DNA of 64,000 nt. Source: Thalia democratica (lineage: Eukaryota). Below are positions 2,772 through 34,334 of this stretch, piece after piece. The stretch lies in the NCBI GenBank assembly GCA_965202585.1, contig OZ241834.1, positions 19,778,001 to 19,842,000 of the forward strand. The letters are read 5' to 3'. The position numbers were made by a program, and so were the translations under genes. How positions within the stretch are numbered: position 1 is the stretch's first letter; each line of letters starts with the position of its first letter. Under the pieces are notes generated by a model that made no database searches, was not told the DNA's origin, and worked only from the letters and a program-made list of their open reading frames with translations.

Positions 2772-2922
2772 CATCAGACAATCCTCAATTAGAGTTCGAT
2801 TCCAATTGAGGCGCGGTAAAATTTAACTCATTTGAGAATCATCATACCGCAGTCATCATTTGATGATCTTACTGGTCTACTACTTGAGTAGACGCGGGTA
2901 AGGATCACCCATACTGAAGAGT
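2772..2922 (-). ncRNA. SNORD118: U8 (SNORD118)-type box C/D snoRNA, copy 1 (variant)
   Basis: The minus strand reads ACUCUUCAGUAUGGGUGAUCCUUACCCG, then the GUCUACU/AGUAGAC hairpin, box C AUGAUGA, the GCGGUA/UACCGC stem, the CCUCAAUUGGA/UCUAAUUGAGG stem, and GUCUGA (box D). Motif order matches vertebrate U8 as recalled (UCAG..GGG..AUCCUUACCUG...AUGAUGA...GCAAC loop...GUCUGA). Confidence 0.8.
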
Positions 2923-4701
2923 GGAATTATCTGTCAACTGTCTGTTAATATTTTATTGCATGCAAGTAATAATTTGCTTGTGACGTCATAGTACACTAGA
3001 ACGTTTTGCTTCGTTGCACACGCACACGAAAGAGAATTAAAGTACAGTAGGGTTTGATTTATATAAAAAGTAAATTTTTGTTGTGATTAAGATTAATATT
3101 TTAGTAAGATTAAACTATCTTTTTGGTATTTTACAAAATATTTTATAACGAATTCTTAGAGTTTTAACTTAAAAAAAATCATATTTCTAAGTTATTTTTT
3201 AAATTTATTTTAACAAAAATAAATATTATTATAGTTTATCTTTAGAAAACTAAGTATATATTTTAAGTATGTGTAACGAAATAATTAAGATTGTAAAATC
3301 AACAAATATTTTTTCATAGCCACTAGCAACTTAAAAAGTCTAATGACCAGACCAGCTAATTTAGTTCTATTTCGGTTCATTATTTTAAATCATAGTTTTG
3401 TAAAAGTTTGTTCAACAAATTTCCTTTTCTTTGACAATCGATTTTAAATAAAGTACATGAAACGTAGATGATGTTTTCAGATTTTAAAATAAGTAATATT
3501 TTAGCTTCGTTTTGTTTATATCGTTAAAAGTTTTATTTTTAAACTTGTTTGTACTTCGAGATAAGTCATATTTTTCTATGCTTAGTTTTAAGATAGTTAT
3601 TATGCTACTAGTATTCTATTTCTTTTTTTTCGTATATGTAAAAAAACTGTTCTCGATAATGTTAAAATCGCTTTATTAAGGCATTTTAGGATTTTTCATG
3701 TTATTTAGATGTACCAAAATCATTAAAACGCATTAACAGTATTTAAATTATAAAAAATTATCAAAAACTTTTTTTGCCGATCGTATAAAAAAAATAACCA
3801 GGAAACAATTTTGTTAGGTACTTTAAAAAAATAATTTATTGAAAAGTAAAACCCAAACAAGTGTTACAAAAAACAAGTTAAAACTTTTATTTATATCAGA
3901 AAATACTTCTAAATTATTTATACCTTTTAGTTTAATTACTGTGTAACGAACCATATTAGAAGATATAAGTTTATGATTCTGTTACCTTACTAGTTTTTAT
4001 TTACTAAAATTTATTACAAATTCCTTCATCTTTTACGTAAACTCATCACTTGCATAAAATAAATTTAGTAATTTTCAAGTAATGTGTGTTTTTACTCAAG
4101 TTCAACCATGCTCAACTAAAGTAAACACGTGAAAGTAGTAACAGCGTGACTAACAATGAATAATTAAGGTAAAACGTTGTTATAATTATTTTTTGTATCA
4201 CTTTAAATGTTTCATAAATTGTAGTATATAAGTCTCAAGTTATATAACTTTAAATATAACAAGTTAATTTAGTTAATGTAAAAGCTCGCGTTTTACTTAT
4301 ACATATACTATTGATAAAGACTAGTAGGGTATTTTTCTATTTAAAGTTTTTTTGTTTAAGTTTAGGGCTAATTTTTTATTAAATTGATATAGTTTATTCA
4401 ACGATAAAAAAGGCGCTTAGATATCTATTCCAAAGACCTAGTGCACAAAGAACCTTTCGGTTATCGAGTCGCACATCAAATATACCTTTTAATGCCTTGT
4501 CCAGGACAAAACGAAACGTTAAAGCGTTTTAGCTTAGTTATATCAAGCTTAGTTGTTTTGGCTTAGTTGTTTTAAGCTGTTACTTTTTGAATACTTTTCA
4601 GACAATAGCTAATAAGTTTAGAAAGGTTGTTTCAAAGCTAAAAAAAATACTTGTGCTATTTCACTAGTTTGAAGTTCTAGTTGATTATATTTCAATAGCT
4701 C

Positions 4702-5689
4702 CAAAGTGGGCTGAAAATAGGGCTCAAGTGGCCATTGATTATAAAATATAATATTTTGAAAAGAAAATCAAATTATGTGTTAAACACAGTTAAGAAGAAC
4801 TTTATTTCTTTGTTTCAAAATTGGTTTTGTTACATTTCTGCTTCAAGTATTTGATAAGTCATGTAAGTTTAAAGTCAACCAGGGTTTGCCTTTTGCAGTG
4901 TAGAAAACTACTGAAAATTCTTCATAGTTTTGTTGAAAAATTTGCTTGCAGAAAGTTACAAAAAAATAAATGAAATAATTATAAACATTTTTTTCCTTTT
5001 GTTTAAAATGGTTTGTTCTATATCAAAAAAAAAAAAAGTTATTTAAAAACTAAAAGTATTAGACTTTTTTTGATATTTAAAAATTATTTTTTTCTAAATA
5101 ATAAGTAAATAGGCATCAAAATATCGCTTGTATAAACCTAAAAATATAGTTGTATACTCCTCGATAGATTTTTTAAAAGTTTTGTCTATAGATTTCTTGT
5201 CGTGTTAGCTAAAAAATAGGAAAAAATATGCCAACGATGAGTTTTTTAAGATATTTAACGTTTAAAAATACCCTATATTACCCTAAAAACACCAATGAAA
5301 TTCCGGGTAATTGAGCAATTTTATAAATAAATAAAAAATACTTTTTTTATATTAAGTCAAAAAATTTATTTTTCAAATTAAACTAATCCAAAGAAAATAA
5401 ATCTAAAAAAAATATCTGCTGTACTTATTCATTTTAAGGTGTATTTTATCACTTACTGTAAGACTTATTCATTGACATAAATTTTAGGGTTATTCGGGTT
5501 ATTTTTTTTAACTTCAAAATAGCAAAAATTTAATACATTTAATTTGACGTACCTTTTTATATATTTGAGGATGATTAAACTGAACCCAACTTTTAAAAGA
5601 AGAAACCTATCTCTACACACTTAAATAAAACTCTTAGTTTAATTTTTTAGTCACTAAAATGTTCAATGTCCGTTTGCCAGCCCACTGTG
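4702..5689 (-). mobile_element. Non-autonomous Transib-like DNA element (988 bp)
   Basis: Termini CAAAGTGGGCTG...CAGCCCACTGTG. 5-bp flanks are AGCTC/TGCTC, and the paralogous site in the right duplication arm reads TGCTC. The end CACAGTGGGCWGGCAA is shared with 15283-16170. Confidence 0.6.
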
Positions 5690-6415
5690 TGCTCATCATT
5701 TAAGTGGTTTAAATACTTCAAAAAAAAGTATCTATACAAGTTTTCATTCAGATCTTGTATTATCAGCTTGAAGTTTAAAAGATAAGTATAAATTAAAATA
5801 CATTTTAAAAACCCACGGTCATAAAGTAGAAAGCAAATAAAAACAAGCCATGCAGTACAAAAGTAAACAAAAGTCTTCTTTCAGTATAGATAAGTCTACC
5901 AAAGTTGTATGTTATTGTTGTTTAAATGTTAACCTAAAAGTTTAAAACAATTTATAAAGTTATGCGTTAGTTTGTTATCACGAGTCAAAAAATATGATAC
6001 GAGAAATAAAAAAAAAAACAAAGTTATAAAAGTTAAGCATTATTACATCCAAACGCTAATTTATTTTGAAAAGGCTATTTTAACTTAAGTTTATTTAAAA
6101 ACTATCAATGTTTTCATGAGCGTTTAGTAAAACTGAGATTGTTTGCTTTTGGTTTTATTAAAATGGTTTCGTTTATAAGAACAACAAAGTATACTTAATT
6201 TAGTTTTAAAAGACTTGAACAGTTTATAAATAGTTCTTATAAACCAAAGCAGTTTTTTAATAAGTTAAATAAAAGTGTAAAAAAGATACTTAGTGCCTAA
6301 AATAAAAACTAATCCCAAATAAAAAAATATTTTCGCTTTTATCATTAAAATTTATAGAATAATATAGTTTGTGAGGGTACAAAAACCACAACAAGACGAG
6401 CGTCTTACTTGGATA

Positions 6416-8194
6416 ATGCAGGTGAACATTTCGAAACAAATGGAAATTTACGAACGTGCCCCAAACTTTTACAGTTGGGAAGAAATGAAGCCGCTCATCC
6501 CCAAGTTAAAACAGCAGGGGTTGGAGCAGTTCGTCCACAATTACACGAGAATGCGGGGTCGAGGGGACTACCCGTTTAAATGGGGCGATGAGATCGAACA
6601 GTTGATCGTCAGAGTGGACGATGAAGCCGAGACGGTCAAGTTGGTACTGAAGGCGACTGAAGTCCTCGAAAAGCTGAAAAAGTTCAACGAGACGCTGGAT
6701 GAGGAGGATCGGATCTGCTGGCAGATGGAATCGAGCGAGTTTCAGGCGGAGAGCACGCCGGGTCAACCTTTTGGAAGCTCGGTGGACGATCTGGCAAAAG
6801 TTGAGGCTAACATGAAGGCCAGAAGGGACCAAATAAACAGTTGTCTGGGCGAAAACGAAAAAATGGTGACCATGACCACATACCCGCTGATTGGCTGCGG
6901 GAACTTTACCGTACCTGCCTTGCAAGTTGGGCCAGAAGACGAAAACCCACTAACGAGATCGATATTTTTCCACGACGACGCCTGCAGCACTTCGCCGGCT
7001 TACAGAGCATGGCATTTTAATATGATGATAAGAAAAGGATCCAAGATCGTCGGCAACGTTCCGGTTTACAAGGACAAAAACATAAGGCTTCCGTTCAGAG
7101 AAAACTTTGGGCGGAAAGAAGACCGGGACGCTAGCAAGGAAGGTCACATCTATCTAGACAGCGTTTGGGTCGCCTACAGCAGCTGCTGCCTTCAAACCAC
7201 CGTTCAGCTGGCTGACTTGGACCAGTGCAAGAAAGTGTACGACCAGCTCGTGGCAATTTCGCCAATTTTGATGGCCATGAGCGCCTCCAGCCCCTTTTTT
7301 CGCGGCTTCGTCTCAGACGTGGACACCAGATGGACGATGATGGTGCAGTGCAACGACGATCGGACGCGAGAAGAAACGAAAACGGTGAAGAGCTCGCGTT
7401 GGGACTCGGCGGATATGTTCTTGCGCGAAGACCATCTCAAGCTCAACGACATTCCCGCTTCGTACGACCAAGAAGCGTTCGATTTTCTCATTTCGCGAGG
7501 TGTCGACGAGGCCGTGTCGAGGCACGTCGCCCATGTTTGGGTGCGAGACCCGTACATCGTGTCGAATGAAAACTCGGACGTTGAAGAGAGCTACTGCTAC
7601 TTCGAGCACATGAACAGTTCCGTCTATCGACCGGTGAGGTTCAAGCCGCCACCCGGACCGAAGTCGCCGATCGGCTGGAGGTGCGAGTTCCGTGTCTTGG
7701 AAATTCAACCGAGCGATTTCGAAAACGCCGCTTTTACCACGTTCGTGGTACTGTTGGTCAGGGCTTTCGCGAAGTTTGACGTGGACATGACTACTCCACT
7801 GACTGGGCATCACTCGAACATGGACAAGGCGCAAAAGAGGGACGCCGTCAGGACGCAAAAGTTCAGCTTTCCCGGCAAACTGCAAGTTGGTGGTGGTGAG
7901 AAAGGAAATGTGGTGCTGATGTCTGCAGACAAAATTATAAACGGCGACGGAGGAGACTTCATCGGGCTGATCGGGCTCGTTAAAGAGTATTTGAAGAGTG
8001 AATCTCACATCGTTGAAACTTCAGAGAAGCTCAGCGCTTACATGAGCCACTTGAGCGGCATAGCTTCAGGCGAGACGCTCACGATGGCGCAGAAAATGAG
8101 GCGGTTCGTTGAAGATCACGAAGATTACAAAGGAGACAGCGTGTTGAATCACAAGATCAACTACGACATGATGAAAGCTTTGTGGGACGTTTGA
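6416..8194 (+). CDS. GCLC: Glutamate-cysteine ligase catalytic subunit family protein (eukaryotic GCS type), intronless, with a divergent substrate pocket
   Basis: Motifs YSWEE, KWGDEIE, ESTPGQPFG, NVPVYKD, HIYLD..CCLQ, SDVDTRW, RFKPPP, IGWRCEFR, DFENAAF align with animal and yeast GCLC. The start is ATG 6416 or 6440; the ORF-track GTG at 6371 is unlikely. Stop TGA. Confidence 0.9.
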   Translation: MQVNISKQMEIYERAPNFYSWEEMKPLIPKLKQQGLEQFVHNYTRMRGRGDYPFKWGDEIEQLIVRVDDEAETVKLVLKATEVLEKLKKFNETLDEEDRICWQMESSEFQAESTPGQPFGSSVDDLAKVEANMKARRDQINSCLGENEKMVTMTTYPLIGCGNFTVPALQVGPEDENPLTRSIFFHDDACSTSPAYRAWHFNMMIRKGSKIVGNVPVYKDKNIRLPFRENFGRKEDRDASKEGHIYLDSVWVAYSSCCLQTTVQLADLDQCKKVYDQLVAISPILMAMSASSPFFRGFVSDVDTRWTMMVQCNDDRTREETKTVKSSRWDSADMFLREDHLKLNDIPASYDQEAFDFLISRGVDEAVSRHVAHVWVRDPYIVSNENSDVEESYCYFEHMNSSVYRPVRFKPPPGPKSPIGWRCEFRVLEIQPSDFENAAFTTFVVLLVRAFAKFDVDMTTPLTGHHSNMDKAQKRDAVRTQKFSFPGKLQVGGGEKGNVVLMSADKIINGDGGDFIGLIGLVKEYLKSESHIVETSEKLSAYMSHLSGIASGETLTMAQKMRRFVEDHEDYKGDSVLNHKINYDMMKALWDV

Positions 8195-9727
8195 TAGTAT
8201 TGATTTGTATAAAGTGATCTTAAAATATGCAATACAATCGGTTCTTTTTGGTCAATAAACTTTGCCTAGAGAGTAACTTTTGCTTGTACAAGTTAAATAA
8301 TTGTGTTGTCTTTTGTAAAAATACGTTTTATACATTCAACAAATTTTTTGATTAGACAAAGGTAAAAGTATCAAAAGACAGTTATTATCTTAATGGGTGT
8401 TATAAAGAATGCATAACAGTTGTTAAAATTTCTATAATTGATTAAAACTTACTTTAAAACTTACACATTTTGGTCATCAATTCATATAGTTATGTGCGGA
8501 GAAAAAATCCATATTAGTACTTAAATTTATTTTTTATTTAAACTTCAAGATATAAGTTGTAAACTAGATTTAACAGTAATTTAACGTGAATTATTTACTT
8601 TTAGCATATATTATTTTAAAGTAGATGGTAGCATATCAATTGAAATTTAGAAAGTTTATATAAGATATTTAACTATAGTTTATATGATTTTATTTACATA
8701 ATCGAATATATGAATTTTAAATTGATAATTAACTTTTGTGTAGTTTCAAAGATTTTTAAGTATAAAAAGGAAAATTAAAACTTATACTTAGACTATAAAG
8801 CAAATGTTTGTACTTAATTAAAGTTGTCTTTTTATATGTTTTAGGTACTATAAATTTCATATAAAATAAGCTAAAATTGAAATGGTTTTTAGTCTAGCTA
8901 AGTTAACACTTTTCAATAATTTTTTAATCTTTGTTTATATACTCAAAAACACTTCAAAATAAGCTAATATAATTTTGGTAAATTTGAATTTTTTTAAATA
9001 GCTTCACATAAACGATTCAATGTGATTCTAAGTTTATTTCAAAACCAGATTTTTGCAGAGGTATTACTACAATTACTCTTCGGTCAAGATAAACTGTTTA
9101 TAATAAAAAAGCTTAAAATAACTGAATGGTTTATTAATCTTTGTTCATAAACTGTGTTTCGTTTTGTTTAAAAACTTAAAAGACAATTAGAACCATATGA
9201 ATAACTTTCTTCATAGTTTTTAAAGTCGCAAAACAGTAAAAAGTAGGGTTTAAATTAGGAATTTATTCTGTTAATATCTGTATTAGTAGAAATATTTTTT
9301 TTAAATACTTTTAACACGGCTTTTATAAGTTATTTTCACAATTTTTTTCTTTTTTAAGGTATCAAAGTCGTTACAAGTTTCAGATATTTACACATTAATA
9401 AATTATTAAAGATCATTTCGTTAATCGCCTAATATTAAAAAAATATATATATTTACAAAGATTAAATTTAGTAAAACCGATTATATAAATCCAAAACAAA
9501 AGTAACTATACTACTAAAAAAAAACAAGTGTTACAGGAAATCGTTTGAAATTTTAAGTTTGTATTGAAAAATATTTTCGAATAATATATTTATTCAGCTA
9601 ATTTTAACTATCAGTTTAGTTGTTTTATAATAAACTAAACTCGATAATATAAGTCTAACTGTTAATAAAAAAAAAGGTTTAATTGTTTGCTAACAAAAGA
9701 TCCTAGTGAAGAAACTTCACTGGAAAA

Positions 9728-11623
9728 TAAATAAAAACAAATTGTACAGTAATCTTCCTTTATTGTACCAACATATGTTTCTGTGTGTTAACAAATCAAC
9801 ACACTTCAACTGGGTTCTGTAAAAATATAATTACTGTAATGAAATAAAAGAAGCATAGAGTAAAGTAGGTGTATACATGTTTTCATTAAAATATTTTTTT
9901 TTTACATATAATAGTTAGTAATAGGTAAAATACTTAATATTAAATCCGACTGTTATAAAACTATATAATATTTGTGATTATTAAGTCTAAAATAAGTAAA
10001 GTAAACTAAAATACACAACAAAACAACAAATAATAATATAAATAAACAACTCACGATAATGGAAAGAAAAACTTATTCAAACTTTACTGTTGTTAATAAA
10101 TGAACAAAATACATTCATTACATCTAATAATTACGTCACAATATAAATGAGGTTATTTCAACTATTTAATTAGTATTGCAAAGTATGTTAATTTAGGTTT
10201 TATGTTTGTAATCTATTTTGAACAAAATAAAACAAATATGTTAGTTCAAATGTAAAAACCAAAATTGAAAAATTAAAATTTAAGAAAACAAAACACAAAA
10301 AAAAAAAACTTGTTATTGAGCTTACAAAGTACTGAACGATAATTAAGTTACAGGGACATACATAAAATCACAATGACTTAAATTACATATATATTGTATT
10401 TAATAACTATTAAAATAATTGATTGATAAAGTAGCAGTCGGTAGTGTGTACACAACCGACGGTTCTTCTTCAAATAACACCTTGGCGCTTTCTCACCCTC
10501 CATATTTTTCATCCACCTTTCACATACACACACACATTCATTTAACATATATTAATAAAATTATATATCTCAAGTAATATATAGTTTTAATCAATTATTA
10601 TTTATATATCTATTTCGCATAAGTCACTTTCTATTACCGACATTTCAATATTCATTTTACCCTCGGACTATAATTCTTCACACCTTTATGTGTTAAGTTC
10701 CAAGTTTAATTTGAAGCCTGTATTCAAATCACAGATAAACCGTGCTTTTTTACCTACTACGCCCAAGAGAGCTAGTAGGTTTTTTACTGCAGGTTTATAC
10801 TTAGCATATGACCACCTCGTTGTTTTACATTTTAACTTTCATATATAATACAGTTTACTTACTTAATATTTAAAATATATGTATGGGATATTTAATTTAA
10901 ACACCCAACTGCTACTTTATCAATCAACTATTGTAATAGTTATTAAATACAATATATATATATGTAATTTAAGTCATTGTGATTTTATGTGTGTCCCTGT
11001 AACTTAATTATCGTTCAGTACTTTGTAAGCTCAATAACAAGTTTTTTTTTTTTTGTGTTTTGTTTTCTTACATTTTAATTTTTCAATTTTGATTTTTACA
11101 TTTGAACTAACATATTTGTTTTATTTTGTTCAAAATAGATTACAAACATAAAAACTAAATTAACATACTTTGTAATACTAATTAAATAGTTGAAATAACC
11201 TCATTTATATTGTGATGTAATTATTAGATGAAATGAATGTATTTTGTTCATTTATTAACAACAGTAAAATTTGAATCAATTTTTCTTTACATTAACATGA
11301 GTTGTTTGTTTATATTATTATTTGTTGTTTTGTTGTGTATTTTAGTTTACTTTACTTATTTTAGACTTAATAATCACAAACATTATATAGTTTTATAACA
11401 GTCGGATTTAATATTAAGTATTTTACCTATTATTAACTATTATCTGTAGAAAATATTTTATTTTAATGAAAACATGTTAACACCTACTTTACTCTATGCT
11501 TCTATTATTTCATTACATTAATTATTTTTTACAGAACCCAGTTGAAGTGTGTTGATTCGTTAACAAACAGAAACATATGTTGGTACAATAAAGGAAGATT
11601 ACTGTACAATCTGTTTTTATTTA
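9728..11623. repeat. Long inverted repeat: about 715-bp arms (9728-10441 and 10907-11623) around a 465-bp spacer
   Basis: The arms are reverse complements at roughly 95% identity by eye, e.g. TTGTACAGTAATCTTCCTTTATTGTACCAACATATG at 9742 and its reverse complement ending near 11610. Confidence 0.92.

Positions 11624-21069: not shown

Positions 21070-21099
<30 letters not shown>
21070..21099. repeat. (TA)n microsatellite
   Basis: About 15 TA units. Confidence 0.95.
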
Positions 21100-21100
<1 letters not shown>

Positions 21101-22832
21101 ACACTCAAATCTGTCTAAGACACAGTTAACGATATTTTTCATTTTTTCATAAACTTATATCATCGAGTTTTGTTTATAATGTAATAAATGATAGTTAAAA
21201 ATAACTAAGTAGTATACATTTAAAAAATATTTTCCAGTACAAATTTTAATTGGTTTTTAGTAACTTTTGTTTTTTTTTTCTAGTAATACAGTTGTTCTTG
21301 TTATAATTTTTCACATTCGGTTTTACAAAAATACTAAAGTTTAATCTTTGTAAACATTTTTTTACACGATCGGCGAAAAACAGAATAGTTTTTAATAATT
21401 TATTATTAAATTTATATTACAATCTATTTTGGTCCTTTGACCAAACGTTTTGAGCGTATTTTTGTCGTTCATTAAACAATAATATTAACATGTAGTAATT
21501 TTTGACTTGTAACGACTTTGTTATCTTAGAAAAAAAAAAAAAAGTGAAAATAAGTTATAAAAGTAATGTTAAAAATAATTTAAAAAAATTGTCTACAAAT
21601 ACAGTAATAAACAGAATTAAATGCTAATTTCAGCCCTAACTTTTTTACTGTTTTATAGCTTTAAAAACTATTAAAAAGCTATTTATATGGTTCTAATTGT
21701 TTTTTAAGTTTTTAAACACAACGGAACACGTTTTATGAACAAATATTAATAAACCGTTCAGTTATCAAAACTTTATTCCATACTAGAATTTTGCAGTGGT
21801 AACAATTTAAATACTCTTCGGTCAAAATAAACTGTTTATTTTAACAGAAGAGCACCGGTAGTAATACCACCGCAAAACTCTAGTTTTGGATTAAGCTTAA
21901 AATCACAATTTTTTTTATCTGAAGCTCTTTAAATTTTTTTAATTGAGCAAAACTATATTAGATTATTTTAAAGTGTTTTTGTTATATGAACAAAAATTAA
22001 AAAAGTTTTGAAAAAGAATTACCTTAGTAAGACTAAAAACTATTTCGATTTTAGCTTATTATACATTAAATTAAAAGTATTTAAAAATTATAAAGTGACA
22101 GCTTTAACTAACTACAATCATTTTCTCTATAGTCTAAGTACAAGTTTAAAGTTTTATTTTTTTATACTGATAAACTTAAGAGGTTTGTAAAACAAAACTG
22201 TTAAAACAAAAACATTTAAGATAGTAGAAAATTTACCTGAAACAAAATTAAATAAAAAGTACATTACAAAATTACGACAATAAACGACATTGTGTGTATT
22301 TCCATTATATATTAGAAAATTAAATATACTATAGTGTAGTTAGTAGTCGTTTTTGTTATTTCGTATAAATTTATTAGCTTCCAATTGATCTGTTACAATC
22401 TACTTTAAAATTTAATATATATAAAAGTAAATAATTTACGTTTAATTACTGTCAAATCTAGTTTCCAACTTATATCTTGAAGTTTAAGAAAAAATCGATA
22501 AAAATACTAATACAGTATTTTCTACGCACATACTTGTATGACTTGATAATTAAAATGTGTAAGTTTTAAGGTAAGTTTTGAGCATTTCTAAAAAGTTTAA
22601 AACTGTTATGTATTCTTTACAACACCTGTTAACTGACTTTTAATACATTTAACTTCGTTTAATTTTGAAAGCTAGTATATATATAATTATGAATATAAAA
22701 AGTAGTTTTACAAATAACATCACAATTAGTTAACTATAGTCAAGCAAAAGTTACTCTACATGCAAACCTTACATGCTAAAAAAAATTGACTGTATTGCAT
22801 ATTTTAAGATCGCTGTATACAAATCAATACTA

Positions 22833-23819
22833 TCAAACGTCCCACAAAGCCTTCATCATGTCGTAGTTGATCTTGTGATTCAACACGCTGTCTCCTTTGT
22901 AATCTTCGTGATCTTCAACGAACCGTCTCATTTTCTGCGCCATCGTGAGCGTCTCGCCTGAAGCTATGCCGCCTAAGTGGCTCATGTAAGCGCTGAGCTT
23001 CTCTGAAGTTTCAACGGTGTGAGCTTCACTCTTCAAATACTCTTTAACGAGCCCGATCAGCCCGATGAAGTCTTTCCCGTCGCCGTTTATAATTTTGTCT
23101 GCAGATATCAGCACCACATTTCCTTTCTCACCACCACCAACTTGCAGTTTGCCGGGAAAGCTGAACTTTTGCGTCCTGACGGCGTCCCTCTTTTGCGCCT
23201 TGTCCATGTTCGAGTGATGCCCAAACAGGGGAGTGGTCAAGTCCACGTCAAACTTCGCGAAAGCCCTGACCAACAGCACCACGAACGTGGCAAAAGCGGC
23301 GTTTTCGAAATCGCTCGGTTGAATTTCCAAGACACGGAACTCGCACCTCCAGCCGATCGGCGACTTCGGTCCGGGAGGCGGCTTGAACCTCACCGGTCGA
23401 TAGACGGAACTGTTCATGTGCTCGAAGTAGCAGTAGCTCTCTTCAGCGTCCGAGTTTTCATTGGACACGAGGAACGGGTCTCGCACCCAAACATGGGCGA
23501 CGTGCCTCGACACGGCCTCGTCGACACCTCGAGAAATGAGAAAATCGAACACTTGTCGGTCGTACGAAACAGGAACGTCGTTGAGCTTGAGGTGATCTTC
23601 GCGCAAGAACATATCCGCCGAGTCCCAACGCGAGCTCTTCACCGTTTTCGTTTCTTCTCGCGTCCGATCGTCGTTGCACTGCACCATCATCGTCCATCTG
23701 GTGTCCACGTCTGACACGAAGCCGCGAAAAAAGGGGCTGGAGGCGCTCATGGCCATCAAAATTGGCGAAATTGCCACGAGCTGGTCGTACACTTTCTTGC
23801 ACTGGTCCAAGTCGGCCAT
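22833..23819 (-). pseudogene. GCLC: 5'-truncated GCLC-family paralogue; open 328-aa ORF covering only the C-terminal half
   Basis: 16 amino-acid differences over 327 residues versus 7211-8194. The N-terminal half (WGDE and E..E metal ligands, CCLQ) and the native upstream region are deleted. Confidence 0.8.
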
Positions 23820-26059
23820 TTAATAAATAAAGTCTTCAAGTTAATTTGTAGTTTTTAAATAGCTTATCTTATAAATGCTATACATTATACTATTTTAAAC
23901 AAAAATAGTAAAAAAGATTTTTGTAAATAAGTTTTTCATCTATTTTTCTGTAACTTTATTCAAGTAGATTTTTGGACAAAACTATGAAGAGTTTTGAGTA
24001 CTTTCAACACTGTAAAAGGCAAAAACTGGTTGGATTTAAACTTAAATAACTTTTCAAATACTTTAAGCAGAAAGTAACAAAACCATTTTTGAAACGAAGA
24101 AATCAAGCTCAGTTTAACTATATTGAACACTTATTTTGATTTTTTATTGAGCATTTTTTTTAACAGTCAATGGCTGCTTGAACCCTGTTTTCAGCCAACT
24201 TAGGAGCAATTAAAATATACTTGACTAGAATTTCAAACGATAAAATAGCACAAATAATTTTTTTTAGCTTTGAAATAACTTTTCTAAAGTTATTACCTTA
24301 ATTCTGATATATATACAAAAACTAAAAGCTTGAAACAACTAAGCTAAAACAACTTAGCTAAATCAACTAAGCTAAAACAACTAATAAAACGTTTAAACGA
24401 CCCGCCATGTCCTGAACAAGAGTGACGTTTAGTTGACAAGAGAGAAGACATGCTTTGTTTCAAAGCATCCGTGGCGTGCGACTCGATAACCGAAAGGTTC
24501 TGCACTGTTCAAGTCTCGTGAACCTTGGACTAAATATTTTGAATGTCTTTTTTGTCGATCATTAAATTATAATAATATCATAAACAATTAAACAAAAACT
24601 CAAACAAAAAATGTAGATAGAAAAATGTCCTAGTAGTCTTTATCAATAGTATATGTATGAATAAATGGCAAGCTTTCACATTAACTTAAGTAAATTGCTA
24701 TATTCAAAATTATATAGCTTGAGACCTTTCTACTACAATCTATGAAACATTTAAAGTGATACAAAAATTATTTTTAGTAATGTTGTACCTTAATTCATTG
24801 TTAGTCATGCTGTTTTTACTTTCAAGTTTTTACTTTATATGAGTACGGTTGAAGTTGAATAAAAATGCACATGGCTAAATTATTTTATTTTTATATACTA
24901 AATTTATTTCATGCAAGTAATGAACTTGCGTTAAAGATAAAGGAGTTTGTAAAAATTTAAAATAAATAAAAAACTAATAAGAAATAAAATCATAAATTTA
25001 TATCTTCTAGTATGTTTGTTACATAATATTTAAACTGACAAGTATAAATAATTATAGTAAAAATACATAACTTAAGAATATTTGTTGACATTAACTACAG
25101 TTTTAAACTTGTTTTTGTAACACTTAATCGTTTTTTTTGTGGTTGTTCACTTATTTGTGTTTTACTTTTTAAGAGTTTGTTTTCTTAAATACCTAAATAA
25201 ATTGTTTCATTCTATTTTTTAAACGATCGGCGTAAAATAAAAGGTTTTTGACTTAAATATACTTTTAACGCGTCAAATTTTTTTTAAACACTTAAAAAAA
25301 AAGACAAAATCCTAAAATGAATGATTGAATTTTTAAAAAAGATGTTAACCAAAAAATTTTTTTTCACATATACACAAAAAATAGAAATAGAGTACTAGTA
25401 GCAAAATAACTGTCTTCAAACTAAGGAAAGAAAAATATGGTTATTACAGAAGTACAAAAAAGTATAAAATTAAAACTTTTATCAATATCAACAAAACGAT
25501 ATTAAAACACTATTTGTTTTTTTAGGTGAAAAGCTTACTAGCAAAAATTAAAAAAGTAATGAATATACCTAAACATCATGAACTTATTTAAAATTTTTTA
25601 GCGTTTGTTGATGTAAAATTATAATTCTAACAAATGAAGGGGAATAAAACAAAGAATTGTTCAAAGTTTTAAAACTTTTTAAAATGTGAGTGGTTTTAAA
25701 GAAAACGTTTGTTGGTTTTACCAGCTTAATTATTTTGGTAAACATACTAATTTTTTTTTTTCTAATTATAAACTAAGATGATAATTTTTTAATTTCACTA
25801 AACAAAAAAATAAGTTAAATTCTCATTTGTAGTAAAAGTAAAATTCTAAGAAGTTCTTATAAAGTATTTTGTCGCATACCAAAACGATAATTTGATTAAA
25901 AATCAAAAACTTACTTTTTTGAAACCAAACCCTACTGTACTTTAATTCTCTTTCATGTGCGTGTGCAATGAAGCGAAACGTTCTAGTTTACTATGACGTC
26001 ACAAGCAAATTATTACTTGCATGCAATAAAATATTAACAGACAGTTGACAGTTATCACC

Positions 26060-26211
26060 ACTCTTCAGTATAGGTGATCCTTACCTGCGTTTACTCAAGT
26101 AGTAGACCAGTAAGATCATCAAATGATGACTGCGGTATGATGATTCTCATATGAGTTATATTCTACCGCGCCTCAATTGGAATCGCAACTCTAATTGAGG
26201 ATTGTCTGATG
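26060..26211 (+). ncRNA. SNORD118: U8 (SNORD118)-type snoRNA, copy 2
   Basis: ACUCUUCAGUAUAGGUGAUCCUUACCUG, hairpin, AUGAUGA, stems GCGGUA/UACCGC and CCUCAAUUGGA/UCUAAUUGAGG with a GCAAC loop, box D CUGA at 26206-26209. Confidence 0.85.
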
Positions 26212-28118
26212 CTAGCCATGACTGAAGAGTTTTTATCTTTTGAGAAAGATTTTTAATACATTAAATGCTTATATGAAAATTCCCGGTAAATTTTTCTTAT
26301 AGAATGCAGTTAAAAATTATTTGAAACAGAAGTAATAGTATCTAGTTTAAATGAAACTTAGCAATACTATGAATAAAATTTCATAAATCAACCATATATT
26401 AAATGAGAAAAAGCTGTCTTTTTAATAAAGCATTGTTAGTTATGAAAAAAACTATCAAAATAAAAAGTTAAAATAAAATACTCTTTTTAAACCTCAACCA
26501 CTGCAAACAAACTTTCGAAAACAACAAGTTTTTTAACAAAGCTGTTTTCATGCAACAAACAGCAGCGCCACAGAAGTCATTCAGGCGCTTGTTTTGACCA
26601 TTGAAAAATATTCCTTATTCTGGAACACAAGTAGGCACAAGACATCACCCTTCAGGATATAGATGAATAGGTATAGATTTTTATAAGTTATCAAGTTTAA
26701 AAATATTTTTTAATATTACGTTATAAATGTAGTCTTTTAAACAGTTTTTTAGTAATTTGAAAAAAAAATTATGACTATTATTATTTTTTAAAGTGTAGAA
26801 TTAACCTTAAATATATGAAAATAATTTTTTATACGCTATCCTTTTATATTAACTACTAAATTATTGGAAATTGAAAATATTAAACTAAAAAACTAAACAA
26901 GAACAAAATAAAGATGTTAAATGAGTATTGTGAAACTTTTTTATATTGAATTTTCTTTCTTTTTAGTTACACCTTAGACCATTGATCTTCTGCTTATTAA
27001 AAAGCTGTGCTCATTAAATTACAGAAAAATAAGTACTGTGCTCACTAGACTATAAAAGTATAAATTCTTGTCTAAATTCCCTCTATTTTATTTTCTATAT
27101 TGATTAGTTAATGTATAAATAATTTGTAAACTGATTGTTTTCGTTATAGTTAGTTTTTTCTAACAGAATGAGGCAAATCAAACGCCAGTTAAAAAACAAA
27201 CTTTTACTTTACTTACTCTATCTTGTGCAGTATAACATTCATAAGCACACTACTTAGGTGAACACTGTGAAGACACTGGTTCAAACTATATCAAATACTT
27301 TTGAAAATAACACGTGATAAAAGTAAGAGCTTTTTTTTAACTCATATACACTGTATAGTTATATACAGTTCTATTTACTACAAAATGCGCTGCAATAAAA
27401 AAAAAACTATTTTCAGAGTACTTGCAGCTTCTTTATCAATAAAGTTGATATCAGCCAATCTGTGTCTGAAGCCTAAAACTGGAACTACTTCCTCACAAAT
27501 AATAAAAACTACAGTCATTTTTACAAAAACTAAATTAACTAAACAGAAACTTAGAATCATCAATTAGAATAAATCTAATGCAAAAATTAAAAGCATCAAA
27601 AAAGAAAAGTAGTAAATTTTATACTCACTTATACAAAAATTAAAATACATCAAGCGTACTAACAAGCATCTAGTTTTAAACAAAAAATAACAATTTTTTG
27701 AGTAGTCTTTTATTAGAAAACTGTCTTATTAATAAAGCATAACTATTTAGGAAAACACCCTTAATAAAGCAAAAAAATGCTAAGAATTTTTTTTTAACCT
27801 CAAACACTACAAACAAACTTTCGAAAATAACAAGTTATTTAACAAAGCTGTTTTCATGCAACAAAAAGCAGCGTTACAGAAGTCCTTCAGGCGCTTGTTT
27901 TGACCATTGAAAAATAAACCTTATATTAATTTTTAGATAAACAAGATTTTAGTTCTGAGTTATCAAAATAAAACTTGGAAGTTTGCTTTGAACTAAAGTT
28001 GTAAGTCTTATTTAGAAGTGAATTGTTTTTAATTGATAGCCCTATGTAGTTTAAATAAAAAAGTTCCGAGTTATTGAAAAGAAAATCAAAGCATTTTGTT
28101 AAATGTAAAAACTGTGAA

Positions 28119-30124
28119 CTAAAAATGAAATTTTATTATATCAAAACTCTCTTGTGAGCACTCGTCTTCTTTGTATGGACATTCTATTTCCCAATTACAA
28201 GATCCACGCAAGTCAAACAAACTGTTGAGTACTTTATGATCATAAGACATTAACATGTTATTTTTACTATCATTATAGTAAGCATCCAAAAAAAGAGCGC
28301 TTAAATAGTCCTGTTTAAACATCGTAATATCTTCATACTCTCCTGACACAACATCAAATGAACGATTAAACGCAGTTTGTCCTTTAGCACATCTTTGCTC
28401 GTCTACATTTTCAAATTCAATCTGAAAGTAGTTAATTGCAACGCTAAATATTATCTCAGTGCTGCAGTACTTTTCGTCAACGCCTCCCGGCAAGTCGTAC
28501 TCCAAGTTGCACAGCAAAGTAAAGTTGTATTTCTTGTAGTTTAAACCATTAACTTCGTGAAAGAAACGACAAAGAGGTCGAACTTCTGACTTTTCGCACG
28601 CACATTCATCCGACAAGTCCTGGCAATCTACTGTTCCATCGCACACTTGGTTTTTGAGGACAATTGTTCCATCAAAGCATCTAAAACACGAAATTTTTCC
28701 ATACTGATCGAAACAGCTGTCTTCTTGATTAATACAGTGTGTATTGTTTTTGTTGAAGGGTAATTTAGGCTGAGGTACTGTGACATTTTTTAAAATGTAG
28801 CCAAAGTCTAAAACATCAATTGTGGGTATTTCACACTTTAAGCCAAACATGTTCATTGAAACAAACTTTTTGATTCTTTCAAGCATCTTGCTTTGGTTTA
28901 AACGAATTATATCAGAAAAAGACTCGTTAGTAAACTTTGTTATAAAGTTAGACCGAGCATAAATAAAAGCCTTGTTAGATACAAAATAACGAAGATACGT
29001 TTGGTTGTATTTACAACCTTCTATTTCGTCGGATCCATCAATGCAGTTTACGTATCCGTTGTATTTTAGTTTCTTTGGTAAGCACCTACTTTGATCTATG
29101 CACAAAAACAACTGGTCGTGCGTGCAGTTTGTGATAAATATTTTTTTTTCTTCTATTCCAAACGGGCAGTCAGAATTACCATCTCCGACCATTTCGTAAG
29201 AAAGACATCTGTTGTGTGTGATTGCGTGGTGGTTTCCTGTTTTTAAACCATAGTAACTTAAATACAACTTACATAACTAGTTTATAAGTTAATGAAATTG
29301 TATTTTAACCTCCATTTAAGTCAGCAATTGGATTATTGTTCATTGTACAGCTAAACTCGTATTCGAAACAGATAAAATTTTCAACATTTTCATCCGACCC
29401 GTCACTGCAGTCTTGTATGTTGTTGTTGACAGAACTCCTATGAACGCACTTTGTTTTGCCTGATTTGCACTCAAACTCGAAACTATGTTCACATGCTATC
29501 TGTGAAGCCTGTTTTTTGAAGAGTTAACTTCAAGAGGTCAGTTTTAAAAAACAATTCAAGCACAGTGAGTTTACTTTTTGAATGATATAAGTTTGATATA
29601 AATATTAACTTTCTTATAGTCACAACTTGCTGCAAGTCTGTCTTGAAATGATTTTTCGCTTCCATTTCTGTTAACTTTTAACTCAATATAGTTAAAAATC
29701 CAATGAGATTCTTTTTTTATGCATGCATAACAACTAAAAACAGTTATTTTGTTAGCACTTCGAAAAAAAAAGTTATGTCTTGAGATTAAAATGATTAATA
29801 AATAAAAGTTTCCCTAAACAATTAAATCTAAATGCATACAGTTTTACCTAGTTTGAAATTTTTTTTTTACTATTTAATATATATTTAAACAACTCTGATA
29901 TTTGTTTGCACATGTTTACCGATGAAATGTGGAGTAGTTCACAAAACTTTCGTCGGTATCTATCTCTGTTATATGCATGCTGTTGTCATCGCACATGTAA
30001 TACGAGTATTCCGCACAAGCCGCCCGCCTCGTTTTTTCTTCAGCGCAAATTTGTCGTCCGTAAGTGTTCCTGCATTGTGTCTCGTTTTCAGTGCAGCTTC
30101 TTGTTGGAATGAAATTTTCATATT
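28119..30124 (-). CDS. Multi-exon cysteine-rich LDL-receptor class A repeat protein; 5' exon not located, 3' end probably frameshifted or truncated
   Basis: Phase-consistent GT-AG exons on the minus strand: 30124-29920, 29667-29610, 29508-29310, 29236-28119. LDLa motifs DCSDGSDE, CIDGSDE, QVCDGTVDCQDLSDEC, ECPYKEDEC, plus many N-glycosylation sequons. Confidence 0.75.
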
Positions 30125-30943: not shown

Positions 30944-31121
30944 CAGGGGTCAACAGCCTTTGATAGTGGGGGTAAGTTTTCTAAAAAATATTTTGCGAGC
31001 ATATTAAATGAAAAAAGTCTGATACTTTTAGTATAAAAAGTTGAGCAAAACTTTTTGGCCTGAAACATGCATATTCAGAAACTTTTGGCAGACTTGGCCG
31101 CAGTCAGTTTGACAACCTCTG
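30944..31121. mobile_element. Possible degenerate hAT-type MITE
   Basis: Ends CAGGGGTCAACAGC / TTTGACAACCTCTG are imperfectly inverted; no matching TSD. Confidence 0.35.
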
Positions 31122-32211: not shown

Positions 32212-32390
32212 TACCGGACCCGGATCCGGTCTTTTTTTTCAAATTAGGATCCTGCCGGAACCGGATCCGGGTTTTTTTTCAAATTAAGATCCGGCCGGAA
32301 CCGAATCCGGATTTATTTTTCAAATTAAGGTCCGGCCGGAACTGGATATTTTTATCAAATTAAAATTCGGACGGATCTGGAACCGGATTT
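32212..32390. repeat. Tandem repeat, about 40-bp unit (CCGGAACCGGATCCGG-T-rich-CAAATTAAGAT), about 4.5 copies
   Basis: CAAATTA recurs at 32240, 32280, 32321 and 32356. Confidence 0.85.
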
Positions 32391-33069
32391 TTAATACTCT
32401 ATGTTATTTATAATGCAAGTAGTATAAAAACTACTATGTACAATAATGCAATTTTATATAACTAACTACTAACTAAGTATAATTGTGTGAAGTTTATCTT
32501 TTATTTGTTATATCTACCTATATGCTTTTGAATTTTGAAAAATTATAGTTTAAAAAAATTTAGATAAAAGTATTATTGGCTACTAAAATAATTAAATATA
32601 AAAAAGTTTATGATATGTTATTAAGGTCTAGTTCAGATTAACAGTTAAAAATAGTAGCTGGTATGTTTGCTAATTTTCTGAACAAAATTTACATATAAGT
32701 TTTATTAAAATTGAAAGAACAAAAGAAAAACCTGAAATTGAAAGAACAGTAAAAAAAAACTTCAAATTGAAAGTACAATAAAAAACACTAAAATATCTTT
32801 TTTGCTAAATTTATAAACTTTCCATGATTTTTGGCAACCAGAATATCACCTAATTTTAGCTAATATCAGGGTTGCCACTCTTTGATTCAAAAAAACTAAT
32901 CTGAGTGATTATAAACTTACCTGAGTCAGAATGAGGTTTAGGAAAACCATTAAAAAAATTATTACTGTAAGCTTATAATCAGTAGAACAGCTAGCCACAA
33001 GGTTGAACATTTTAAGTAATGTTTATAATTAAGGCTATAGGGGGGTTAAACACTTTTTTTACAAGTTAA

Positions 33070-33664
33070 TCTTATTTAATAGAATACTATCTTAGCTACC
33101 ATATGCTTTTTATAGCTTTACAAAATTCAAAGTAGTTTTTGTGATATAAACGGACAAAGCCGGAGAGTTCCACAGGGACCTAATAGAAGGCGCAAGCTAA
33201 AAACGCGGAAATATTAATTTCACTAAAAATCTATTTCCTCCTAGGTTTTTTAAGCTAGGTACCACAAATTTTCAAAAAATATTCCTTACACAGTTTAAAA
33301 GCTTTTGAGTGCTGGAATTTCAAATAATTGAAATTTACAAATTTAATGTCTAAAATTCACAAAAAAGAACTCTTTTTTTTGAAAAAAAGGGGAATTTTTC
33401 TCAAAATAAAAAAGTTTCTTAAGTCAAATGATTTGAAATTTAGTAAAGAGTAAACTGTAAAAATTTGAATAAGATTGCTTAAAAACTGTAGGTGGAGGTA
33501 GATTTTTAATGAAATGGTTTTTTTTTCGCCTTTTTAGTTTCCACCTTCTATAAGGAAGCTATTGAGCTGGCCGGCTTTGACCCCTTTTATCTCGAAAAAT
33601 ACTTTGAGTTTTGTTAAGCTGTAAAAAGTATCTGGTAGCTAAGATTAAAATCTATCAAAAAAGA
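33070..33664. mobile_element. MITE with about 100-bp imperfect TIRs flanked by TTAA
   Basis: Left ATCTTAGCTACCATATGCTTTTTATAGC...AAAGCCGG mirrors right CCGGCTTTG...GGTAGCTAAGAT. TTAA at 33066-33069 and 33665-33668. Confidence 0.65.
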
Positions 33665-34098
33665 TTAATTGATATTAAAAATCGATTGTCAAAGAAAAGG
33701 GCACACATTGTACAATTTTTTTCATAATTATAATTAAAAGAAAACTAATGAAAAAAAATATATATAGCTGATCTAAGTCATTAATTTTTTTTAAATGTTA
33801 GTGGTTATAAGGAAAATGTTTGTTGATTTTACTAGTTTAACTATTTAGTTATACACTCAAAATATAAACATTCAATTTTTAAAGATAAACTAAGATGATA
33901 ACTTTATTAAATTTAAAACAATACTTTTGAATATAATTTGCTTAAAAAATTTAAATTCTAATAAGTCGTTATATAGAATATTTTGCAGCATACTAAAAGG
34001 ATTAAACAAAAGCTTAACTTTTTATAAAACACAAACCCTCCTGTACTTTAATTCTCTTTCATGTTCGCGTGCGATGAAGCGAAACGTTGTAGTGTATT

Positions 34099-34132
34099 AT
34101 GACGTCACAAGCAAACTATTACTTGCATGCAA
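34099..34132 (+). promoter_or_regulatory. Candidate U8 proximal promoter: ATGACGTCAC (-67 to -58) and TTGCATGCAA (-43 to -34)
   Basis: The same motifs sit at the same distance upstream of all three U8 copies (ATGACGTCAC also at 25993-26002, and at 2980-2989 on the minus strand). Confidence 0.55.
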
Positions 34133-34165
34133 TAAAATATTTATAGACAGTTGACAATTATCACC

Positions 34166-34317
34166 ACTCTTCAGTATGGGTGATCCTTACCTGCGTCTAC
34201 TCAAGTAGTAGACCAGTAAGATCATCAAATGATGACTGCGGTATGATGATTCTCACATGAGTTATATTCTACCGCGCCTCAATTGGAATCGCAACTCTGA
34301 TTGAGGATTGTCTGATG
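34166..34317 (+). ncRNA. SNORD118: U8 (SNORD118)-type snoRNA, copy 3 (best consensus match)
   Basis: ACUCUUCAGUAUGGGUGAUCCUUACCUG, hairpin 34195-34213, box C 34229-34235, stem 34238-34275, stem 34277-34306 with a GCAAC loop, box D 34312-34315. Confidence 0.88.
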
Positions 34318-34334
34318 CTAGCCATGAATGAAGA

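What the first reader, a model, noticed from the sequence alone, without database searches (positions are those of the whole stretch)
2772..34317. Three U8-type snoRNA genes absent from the ORF track, with a 5' end complementary to the LSU rRNA motif ACCCGCUGAA
Seen: three copies of about 150 nt (2772-2922 minus, 26060-26211, 34166-34317), far more alike than their distant flanks. Each has CCUUACC(U/C)G, three hairpins with G-U-tolerant variation, box C, a UGAUU-containing third stem-loop, and box D. UUCAG(UA)UGGGU can form 10 bp, with a 2-nt bulge, to the universal 28S 5' motif ACCCGCUGAA. Established: U8 is an independently transcribed snoRNA needed for 5.8S/28S processing and is poorly annotated outside vertebrates. 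Inference: a multi-copy invertebrate U8 locus with a lengthened 5' pairing segment.
Basis: partly seen in the sequence, partly recalled or inferred. Interest (0 to 1): 0.72.

Follow-up and report, generated by a model that had tools for sequence, protein, structure and literature searches.

The report
U8 snoRNA genes in a tunicate
The three repeats are real, independently promoted U8 small nucleolar RNA genes in what looks like a sea-squirt genome, showing that this ribosome-processing RNA, still called vertebrate-specific in recent papers, exists outside vertebrates with its precursor and pairing features intact.

Summary
Observation confirmed. All three copies match Rfam U8 (RF00096) over the full model: 48.3, 53.5 and 58.1 bits against a gathering score of 41.

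They belong to a family of 17 copies in this 800-Mb genome: 15 full-length, one divergent but intact variant, and one pseudogene. This is not a SINE.

Every intact copy has the CRE-like octamer TGACGTCA about 66 nt upstream. The same element sits upstream of this genome's U1, U3 and U6 genes. U8 lacks the U6-type TATA box and T-run terminator, so it is probably a Pol II snRNA-type gene.

Paralogs keep three hairpins through compensatory changes: 13 pairs changed on both sides, against 4.2 in shuffles.

- A 3' trailer pairs with the RNA's 5' end, like the pre-U8 duplex described in human.
- The 5' end's best rRNA partner is about 400 nt from the 28S 3' end (15 bp, -18.3 kcal/mol), not ACCCGCUGAA (10 bp, about -12). 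This fits the region reported by PARIS2 in mammals.

The "lengthened 5' segment" is not supported. I found no RNA evidence for expression.

The genome is probably an ascidian tunicate. Standard Rfam annotation would find these genes, so this is a new member of a known kind, of moderate interest.

The parts
2978..2988 (-). Copy A promoter element TGACGTCACAA (CRE-like octamer at about -66)
   Evidence: There are 5 matches in the window against 0.03 expected. The same octamer lies upstream of this genome's U1, U3 and U6 genes.
2773..2922 (-). Copy A U8 RNA body. The 5' antisense element is 2906-2922, box C 2853-2859 and box D 2774-2777. It carries a U-to-C change in the stem-loop 1 closing stem and a 1-nt deletion in the GCAAC loop.
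   Evidence: Rfam U8 48.3 bits, model 1-135. Folds.
2730..2767 (-). Copy A 3' trailer. CCAUAAGUGAAGAG (2754-2767) is complementary to the 5' end. A T-run and a weak downstream hairpin follow.
25994..26004 (+). Copy B promoter element TGACGTCACAA at -66
26060..26211 (+). Copy B U8 RNA body. Box C is 26123-26129 and box D 26206-26209. A G13-to-A change in the 5' antisense element weakens both predicted duplexes.
   Evidence: Rfam U8 53.5 bits. Duplex energies.
26216..26250 (+). Copy B 3' trailer. CCAU-G-ACUGAAGAG (26216-26229) pairs with nt 2-14 of the RNA. The downstream hairpin AUCUUU-UGAG-AAAGAU is at 26235-26250.
34100..34110 (+). Copy C promoter element TGACGTCACAA at -66
34166..34317 (+). 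Copy C U8 RNA body, the most canonical of the three. Box C is 34229-34235 and box D 34312-34315.
   Evidence: Rfam U8 58.1 bits. The mature form folds with a free 5' end, z = -4.3.
34322..34353 (+). Copy C 3' trailer. CCAUGAAUGAAGAG (34322-34335) pairs with the 5' end. The downstream hairpin is at 34342-34353.
   Evidence: The precursor's minimum-energy fold contains the 5'-end/3'-trailer helix: -63.9 kcal/mol, z = -5.7. Duplex p = 0.001 against shuffled trailer.
1649..8286 (.). Left arm of an inverted segmental duplication whose right arm is 22741-27339. It carries U8 copies A and B and a pair of glutamate-cysteine-ligase-family ORFs.
   Evidence: the repeat finder pairs I1, I2, I5, I6 and I7. 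Pfam PF03074 on 6371-8194 (+) and 22833-23819 (-).

Best explanation
These are paralogous genes for the U8 box C/D snoRNA of a non-vertebrate chordate, probably an ascidian tunicate.

Gene model:
- Each gene is its own transcription unit. A CRE-like octamer sits at about -66 and is shared with the genome's U1, U3 and U6 genes.
- There is no U6-type TATA box or T-run terminator, and some copies have T4-T5 runs inside the RNA body. Transcription is therefore most likely by RNA polymerase II (inferred).
- The primary transcript carries a 3' trailer of about 20 nt whose CCAU..ACUGAAGAG segment pairs with nt 1-14 of the RNA. This sequesters the 5' antisense element in the precursor. The pairing is shown in silico and is conserved in the paralogs and in two of three metagenomic lineages.
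- A covarying hairpin about 25 nt past box D probably acts in 3'-end formation (inferred).

Proposed action (inferred):
- After trimming, the mature RNA of about 150 nt forms a box C/D snoRNP.
- Its freed 5' end pairs with pre-28S rRNA, most probably with UACCCUACUGAUGGAG about 400 nt from the 28S 3' end.
- By my mapping onto 23S architecture, that sequence is the 3' strand of the long-range helix closing domain V (H73).
- U8 would hold that strand open until it is released, as proposed for vertebrate U8 in 5.8S/28S maturation.
For: - Family match: full-length Rfam U8 hits above the gathering score for all three copies, 15 in the genome and 17 by blastn.
- Structure: on 14 paralogs, 93.6% of cells are paired against about 42% with slid partners. 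13 pairs changed on both sides against 4.2 in shuffles, 0/500. All three hairpins refold in every divergent paralog.
- Conserved loops: the GCAAC loop and GAUU are shared with the Rfam consensus.
- Promoter: TGACGTCA lies at -64 to -77 in all 15 copies, at -75 in U1 and U3, and at -83 with a TATA at -31 in U6.
- Precursor helix: it is part of the minimum-energy fold, z = -5.7. Trailer-shuffle p is 0.012 or lower in 5 of 6 distinct tunicate trailers, and 0.000 and 0.008 in two metagenomic lineages. It matches the human pre-U8 duplex of bioRxiv 10.1101/2019.12.12.874594.
- Target: the top-ranked duplex over 6 kb of pre-rRNA is at 28S ~3225, -18.3 kcal/mol. The same site is favoured by three other U8 lineages, -17.9 to -20.4 against -10.8 to -12.2 for the 28S 5' motif. 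PARIS2 places the mammalian U8 site about 500 nt from the 28S 3' end (PMC8058046).
Against: - No RNA evidence. The sequencing runs found are DNA-like contigs, so expression, ends, cap and localisation are unknown.
- Duplex energy alone is not significant. Shuffled 17-mers reach -18.3 somewhere in 6 kb of rRNA 43% of the time. The argument rests on which site ranks first.
- I could not read the exact PARIS2 coordinates.
- The 5'/3'-trailer helix shows only one-sided (U.G) changes because the 5' side is invariant. It is absent in one metagenomic lineage (p = 0.46).
- Copies A and B carry changes at otherwise invariant positions and may be weaker alleles.
- The CM does not align the GAUU region confidently to the vertebrate LSm octamer.
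Confidence: 0.85

Rival explanations
1. One reading: U8 whose lengthened 5' end acts by pairing with the 28S 5' motif ACCCGCUGAA, following the classical 28S 5'-end model.
For: UUCAG..UGGGU can pair with ACCCGCUGAA in this genome's 28S. The divergent paralog at C8:57101689 has CGGGU, which turns the U.G pair into C-G. Genetic work in Xenopus implicated the 28S 5' end, as summarised in PMC8993069.
Against: The duplex is only -12.3 to -12.7 kcal/mol, reached by 22% of shuffles against a 93-nt target. It is weaker than the domain V/VI site in all five U8 sequences tested. The CM alignment shows no insertion in the 5' segment.
Confidence: 0.2
2. The copies are retroposed pseudogenes or a SINE derived from a snoRNA, not working genes.
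For: The family is multi-copy and dispersed. One copy (C10:8885349) is clearly dead: its CRE is mutated and a 59-nt deletion removes box D. C6:54204052 has box D changed to UUGA.
Against: There are only 17 copies. All intact ones keep the upstream promoter, which a retrocopy would lack. Compensatory changes maintain the hairpins. There are no poly-A tails. Copies A and B arose by DNA-level inverted duplication.
Confidence: 0.04
3. A lineage-specific snRNA-promoter small RNA that only resembles U8, and is not orthologous to it. Other parts of this genome hold large families of snRNA-promoter mini-genes.
For: Earlier notes on this genome describe many CRE-driven cassettes of unknown function. 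The SL2 region aligns poorly to the model.
Against: The model is covered end to end at 48-65 bits. AUCCUUACC, boxes C and D and the GCAAC loop are conserved in order and spacing. Metagenomic relatives score 63-72 bits.
Confidence: 0.05

Closest known systems
Vertebrate U8 snoRNA (SNORD118; Rfam RF00096)
   Same: - Length of about 140-150 nt.
- A 5' single-stranded antisense element followed by AUCCUUACC.
- Stem-loop 1, box C, a GAUU-bearing stem-loop 2, stem-loop 3 with a GCAAC loop, and box D.
- Its own snRNA-type promoter.
- A 3'-extended precursor whose trailer pairs with the 5' end.
- Multi-copy clusters, as in zebrafish and Xenopus.
   Different: - The host is a tunicate.
- The 5' terminus reads ACUCUUCAG rather than the consensus UCaUCAG. 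This matches a local difference in this species' 28S (GGAG after CUGAU).
- The promoter uses the tunicate CRE-like octamer.
- SL2 is longer, and the CM does not align its GAUU to the vertebrate octamer.
- A covarying hairpin lies downstream of the trailer.
C. elegans CeR-2 RNA (proposed U8 analogue, PMC2943600)
   Same: A non-vertebrate, independently transcribed box C/D RNA proposed to act in ITS2 and 26S processing, with a 5' end complementary to the large-subunit rRNA.
   Different: CeR-2 was proposed from function and loose resemblance. The present RNA is a sequence-and-structure homologue that passes the Rfam U8 model.
U3 snoRNA genes of the same genome
   Same: The same CRE-like promoter element, a downstream hairpin with a UGAG-type loop, and multi-copy organisation. 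On C1 and on the near-identical contig C353, a U3 gene and a U8 gene lie tail to tail about 360 nt apart.
   Different: A different RNA body and a different target (18S processing). The CRE sits at -75 and -103 rather than -66.

Membership tests
U8 snoRNA (RF00096) | Covariance-model score above the curated gathering score, over the full model | tested here: met
   48.3, 53.5 and 58.1 bits against 41, model positions 1-135. 15 genome copies score 48-65 bits.
U8 snoRNA (RF00096) | Box C (RUGAUGA) and box D (CUGA) | tested here: met
   AUGAUGA is invariant in all 14 aligned paralogs. CUGA is kept in 13; C6:54204052 reads UUGA.
U8 snoRNA (RF00096) | Conserved 5' region with AUCCUUACC, followed by stem-loop 1 | tested here: met
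   GAUCCUUACC is invariant. Stem-loop 1 is kept with compensatory changes, including a wholly different stem at C8:57101689.
U8 snoRNA (RF00096) | LSm-binding motif (conserved GAUU) in stem-loop 2 | tested here: inconclusive
   AUGAUUCUC is invariant in all paralogs and is similar in two metagenomic lineages. The CM does not align it to the vertebrate UGAUUA. Binding cannot be tested here.
U8 snoRNA (RF00096) | Stem-loop 3 with a conserved loop (GCAAC) | tested here: met
   GCAAC is present in copies B and C and in most paralogs, and is upper-case in the Rfam consensus. Copy A has a 1-nt deletion. The stem has 4 pairs changed on both sides.
U8 snoRNA (RF00096) | Independent snRNA-type transcription unit, not intronic | tested here: met
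   The CRE-like octamer sits at a fixed distance in all 15 copies and is shared with U1, U3 and U6. The choice of polymerase is inferred.
U8 snoRNA (RF00096) | 3'-extended precursor whose trailer pairs with the 5' end | tested here: met
   The helix is part of the minimum-energy fold of the precursor. It is 88.5% paired across paralogs. Trailer-shuffle p is 0.012 or lower in 5 of 6 trailers. All of this is in silico.
U8 snoRNA (RF00096) | 5' end complementary to 28S rRNA | tested here: inconclusive
   There are 15 bp to 28S ~3225 (-18.3 kcal/mol, the top site) and 10 bp to ACCCGCUGAA (about -12). Neither energy beats shuffles on its own.
U8 snoRNA (RF00096) | Expressed, TMG-capped, nucleolar, and required for 5.8S/28S maturation | not testable with these tools
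   No RNA run holds the locus, and the runs found are contigs with flanks.

The most novel reading that the evidence does not exclude
The U8 5' element is an ancient antisense guide to the 3' strand of the 28S helix that closes domain V, and the pre-U8 3' trailer is a built-in mimic of that rRNA target.

- In one metagenomic lineage the trailer reads ACCCUACUGAUG, the same 12 nt as the 28S site.
- In the tunicate paralog at C8:34444381 the trailer reads CCUAAACUGAUGGG.

The precursor would then be auto-inhibited until it is trimmed. The tunicate and metagenomic sequences would give independent phylogenetic support to the site near the 28S 3' end seen by crosslinking in mammals, as against the classical 28S 5'-end model.
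Probability: 0.35. Interest if true: 0.6.

Novelty: new member of a known kind. Interest (0 to 1): 0.45.

Why it matters
Reviews and preprints up to 2025 still call U8 vertebrate-specific. One asks why it is not conserved in non-vertebrates (PMC8993069; bioRxiv 10.1101/2025.10.10.681432).

A clear U8 family in a tunicate, plus three further non-human-type lineages in metagenomes, shows which features predate vertebrates: the RNA itself, its snRNA-type gene, its GCAAC loop and its 5'-end/3'-trailer precursor duplex. [quoted passage not shown]

The pairing data also bear on the open question of where U8 binds 28S.

Against this, a routine Rfam scan finds these genes. From memory only, Marz et al. 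2011 (RNA Biol 8:938) reported U8 homologues outside vertebrates; the paper is not held in the library and I could not check it.

Tried and rejected
- **SINE or retro-pseudogene.** Rejected on copy number (17) and on the conserved upstream promoter.
- **Lengthened 5' segment.** Rejected from the CM alignment.
- **Pol III gene.** Judged unlikely. There is no U6-type TATA at -31, the trailers of divergent copies have no consistent T-run, and some copies have T4-T5 runs inside the RNA body.
- **Energy statistics for rRNA pairing.** Neither site beats shuffles on its own (p = 0.22 and 0.43).
- **Expression.** The one sequencing-run search gave only DNA-like Logan contigs, and laying them showed flanks, paralog variants and the pseudogene's deletion, but no RNA.
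- **Fifth CRE-like site (41962-41972, minus strand).** No RNA family or obvious gene lies downstream of it.
- **Literature.** Marz 2011, Peculis 1997, Tomasevic 2002 and Lu 2016 are not held. The PARIS2 supplements held no U8 coordinates.
- **Species identification.** The protein-atlas look-up on the PARP ORF did not identify the phylum.
- **U2 search.** The genome-wide U2 search failed on the server. U2 was later seen inside the rDNA unit.
- **Human sequence.** The metagenome pattern was written so that the vertebrate-type GGAUAAUCC would not match, and none of the six confirmed U8 hits looked human.
Full report
**1. Observation**

A scan of the whole window against Rfam at gathering thresholds returns exactly three hits. 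All are U8 (RF00096), all cover model positions 1-135, and they score as follows against a cut-off of 41 bits:
- 2773-2920 (-): 48.3 bits
- 26062-26210 (+): 53.5 bits
- 34168-34316 (+): 58.1 bits

Box C (AUGAUGA), box D (CUGA), the AUCCUUACC block and three hairpins are present in each copy.

The three-way alignment is nearly invariant from about 130 nt upstream to about 40 nt downstream of the RNA.

Copies A and B also share flanks, because they lie in an inverted segmental duplication (1649-8286 against 22741-27339). That duplication also carries a pair of glutamate-cysteine-ligase-family ORFs. Copy C shares only the ~300-nt gene unit with B (25915-26214 against 34021-34320, 93%).

**2. Family size and integrity**

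The window is C10:19778001-19842000 of an 801.8-Mb assembly.
- The U8 model finds 15 copies above threshold, and blastn finds 17.
- A fourth member of the local cluster lies 8.4 kb before the window start (C10:19769563, minus strand). The cluster therefore reads -,-,+,+.
- Other copies are on C6 (four), C2 (two), C1 and C8, and on the short contigs C58 and C353. The C353 copy is near-identical to the C1 copy, so the short contigs probably duplicate chromosomal loci.
- One copy (C10:8885349) is a pseudogene. Its promoter octamer is mutated and a 59-nt deletion removes box D.
- One copy (C8:57101689) is a divergent but intact variant.

Seventeen copies, each with a promoter, is a gene family and not a SINE.

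**3. Selection on structure**

I aligned 14 distinct paralogs from +1 to +215 (A2) and tested a structure drawn from copy B.
- 93.6% of cells form standard pairs, against 40-44% when partners are slid by 1-3 columns.
- 13 pairs have changes on both sides, against 4.2 ± 1.6 in shuffles (0 of 500 shuffles reach 13).
- Folding each hairpin separately shows all three retained in every intact paralog. This holds for a wholly different stem-loop 1 at C8:57101689 and for rebuilt stem-loops 2 and 3 in the C2 copies.
- Invariant single-stranded features are GAUCCUUACC, box C, AUGAUUCUC, and box D in 13 of the 14. The GCAAC loop of stem-loop 3 is kept in most and is upper-case in the Rfam consensus.

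The 2025 zebrafish study calls the stem-loop 3 loop essential and conserved (bioRxiv 10.1101/2025.10.10.681432).

Within the window, copy C is the canonical one.
- Copy B has G13-to-A in the 5' element.
- Copy A has a U-to-C change that opens the base of stem-loop 1 and a 1-nt deletion in the GCAAC loop.

**4. Promoter and 3' end**

I fetched U1, U3 and U6 genes of the same genome and compared their flanks with those of U8.

| Gene | TGACGTCA position | Other signals |
|---|---|---|
| U8 | -66 (range -64 to -77), all 15 copies | no TATA at -31, no consistent T-run in the trailer |
| U1 | -75 | none |
| U3 | -75 (as TGATGTCA), second site at -103 | none |
| U6 | -83 | TATATAT at -31; T-run terminator |

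In the window, TGACGTCAYAA occurs five times against 0.03 expected. Four of the five belong to the three U8 promoters.

Divergent U8 copies lack any consistent T-run in the trailer, and several copies have T4-T5 runs inside the RNA body. I therefore infer Pol II snRNA-type transcription, as for vertebrate U8.

About 25 nt past box D lies a short hairpin (AUCUUU-UGAG-AAAGAU in copy B). Five of its six pairs change on both sides among paralogs. U3 genes have a similar hairpin with a UGAG-type loop just downstream. I take it for a 3'-end formation signal; this is inference.

**5. Precursor duplex**

Between box D and that hairpin every copy has CCAU..(A/G)NUGAAGAG, which is complementary to nt 1-14 of the RNA.
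- The predicted precursor of copy C (173 nt) has this helix in its minimum-energy and centroid folds: -63.9 kcal/mol, z = -5.7.
- The 152-nt mature form leaves nt 1-13 unpaired in the centroid.
- Across paralogs the helix is 88.5% paired. Its changes are one-sided and U.G-compatible, which is expected because the 5' strand is invariant.
- Against shuffled trailers the duplex has p of 0.012 or lower in five of six distinct tunicate trailers.

This is the arrangement reported for human pre-U8. There, mutations in the 5' end or the 3' extension change processing, and a compensatory pair restores it (bioRxiv 10.1101/2019.12.12.874594).

**6. What the 5' end pairs with**

I took this genome's rDNA unit (L055). 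It holds 5.8S, a 222-nt ITS2 and a 3631-nt 28S.

The 10-bp pairing with a 2-nt bulge exists. However, the duplex is only -12.3 to -12.7 kcal/mol, and 22% of shuffles match it on a 93-nt target.

Scanning U8 nt 1-17 over 5.8S, ITS2, 28S and 400 nt of 3' ETS, and then over 6 kb including 18S, gives the best site at 28S ~3225. The sequence there is UACCCUACUGAUGGAG: 15 bp with a single bulge on each strand, -18.3 kcal/mol. The next best site scores -14.0.

Energy alone is not significant, because shuffled 17-mers find a site at -18.3 or better somewhere in 6 kb 43% of the time. What matters is where the site lies.
- It is about 400 nt from the 28S 3' end.
- In the Rfam LSU consensus it sits right after the hairpin CCGUCGUGAGACAGGUU and just before the sarcin-ricin loop.
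- It is the 3' strand of a long-range helix. By my knowledge of 23S architecture this is H73, which closes domain V.

I could not read the exact PARIS2 coordinates, so the homology of the two sites is probable but not shown.

**7. Other lineages**

A single metagenome scan used a pattern that excludes the vertebrate-type GGAUAAUCC. It gave 26 loci, and I submitted seven U8-like ones to cmscan. Six of those seven are U8 by Rfam at 63-72 bits, and they fall into three lineages: L061/L065, L070/L071/L075 and L077.

Their 5' ends differ from one another at paired positions only by wobble-compatible transitions (A-to-G opposite U, C-to-U opposite G). All prefer the domain V/VI site (-17.9 to -20.4 kcal/mol) to ACCCGCUGAA (-10.8 to -12.2). 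These energies use the tunicate 28S as a proxy, since each lineage's own rRNA is unknown.

- In the L070 lineage the 3' trailer begins ACACCCUACUGAUGC. That is a near copy of the 28S site, and it pairs with the 5' end at about -19 to -20 kcal/mol.
- L077 also has a significant trailer duplex (p = 0.008).
- L061/L065 does not (p = 0.46).

The source organisms of these contigs are unknown.

**8. The host**

- The 28S is short (3631 nt), and the 5.8S departs from the metazoan sequence I recall from memory.
- The rDNA unit carries U2, U5 and 5S genes downstream of 28S on the same strand.
- The 16-nt spliced leader that I recall from Ciona, followed by GT, occurs 1048 times against 22 for the reversed control. 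One copy lies in each rDNA unit.

This supports an ascidian-type tunicate, as earlier notes on this genome also say. The leader sequence came from memory, so I treat the identification as likely, not certain.

**9. Comparison and novelty**

The RNA passes every sequence-level membership test for U8 that I could run. Expression, cap, localisation and function could not be tested.

The "lengthened 5' pairing segment" is not there: cmscan aligns positions 1-23 without any insertion.

The field's reviews still describe U8 as vertebrate-specific (PMC8993069; the 2020 and 2025 bioRxiv papers). In 2010 no invertebrate homologue was known apart from the C. elegans candidate CeR-2 (PMC2943600). From memory only, Marz et al. 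2011 reported U8 homologues outside vertebrates, and the Rfam model clearly reaches them.

This is therefore a new member of a known kind, in the sister group of vertebrates. Its value lies in showing which U8 features are ancestral and in adding comparative weight to the site near the 28S 3' end.

**10. Limits**

No human sequence was given to any tool. Comparisons with vertebrate U8 rest on the Rfam consensus printed and on the cited papers.

Noticed in passing
window 1649-8286 and 22741-27339: A large inverted segmental duplication (arms 84-95% alike) duplicates a glutamate-cysteine-ligase-family ORF (6371-8194 + and 22833-23819 -, Pfam PF03074). The arms flank an apparently intronless PARP-family ORF with WGR, regulatory and catalytic domains at 16310-17887.
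   Followed up: partly
L055 (G000:C26:5000-14500), minus strand: The ~15-kb rDNA repeat carries four more genes on the same strand after 28S: U2 (3168-3363), U5 (2972-3086), a spliced-leader-type gene (ATTCTATTTGAATAAG|GT at about 2130-2147) and 5S rRNA (1062-1180). This is an unusual linkage of Pol I, II and III genes in one unit.
   Followed up: partly
G000:C1:69845221-69845918 and C353:25735-26435: A U3 gene and a U8 gene lie tail to tail about 360 nt apart. U1, U3 and U6 are each present in at least 33-50 copies in this genome.
   Followed up: no
window 41962-41972 (-): A fifth TGACGTCATAA site has no recognisable small-RNA gene downstream. It sits next to coding-like sequence.
   Followed up: partly
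window 9898-10308 and 11043-11453: Inverted repeat with 411-nt arms, 96% complementary and 734 nt apart. It may be a foldback or terminal-inverted-repeat element.
   Followed up: no
L061/L065, L070/L071/L075, L077: Three U8 lineages from unidentified organisms in metagenomes. Each has a CCCA(C/T)A-type box about 55-70 nt upstream, resembling the ACCCACAAAC box upstream of this genome's rDNA-linked spliced-leader gene.
   Followed up: partly
L057, L059, L067, L068: Four metagenomic contigs share a GUGAUCCUUACCUG...GAUGAUGA unit that resembles the start of U8. The one tested (L057) did not reach the Rfam threshold. Its nature is unknown.
   Followed up: partly
window 28119-29267 (-): A 382-aa ORF with two LDL-receptor class A repeats lies between U8 copies B and C.
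   Followed up: no
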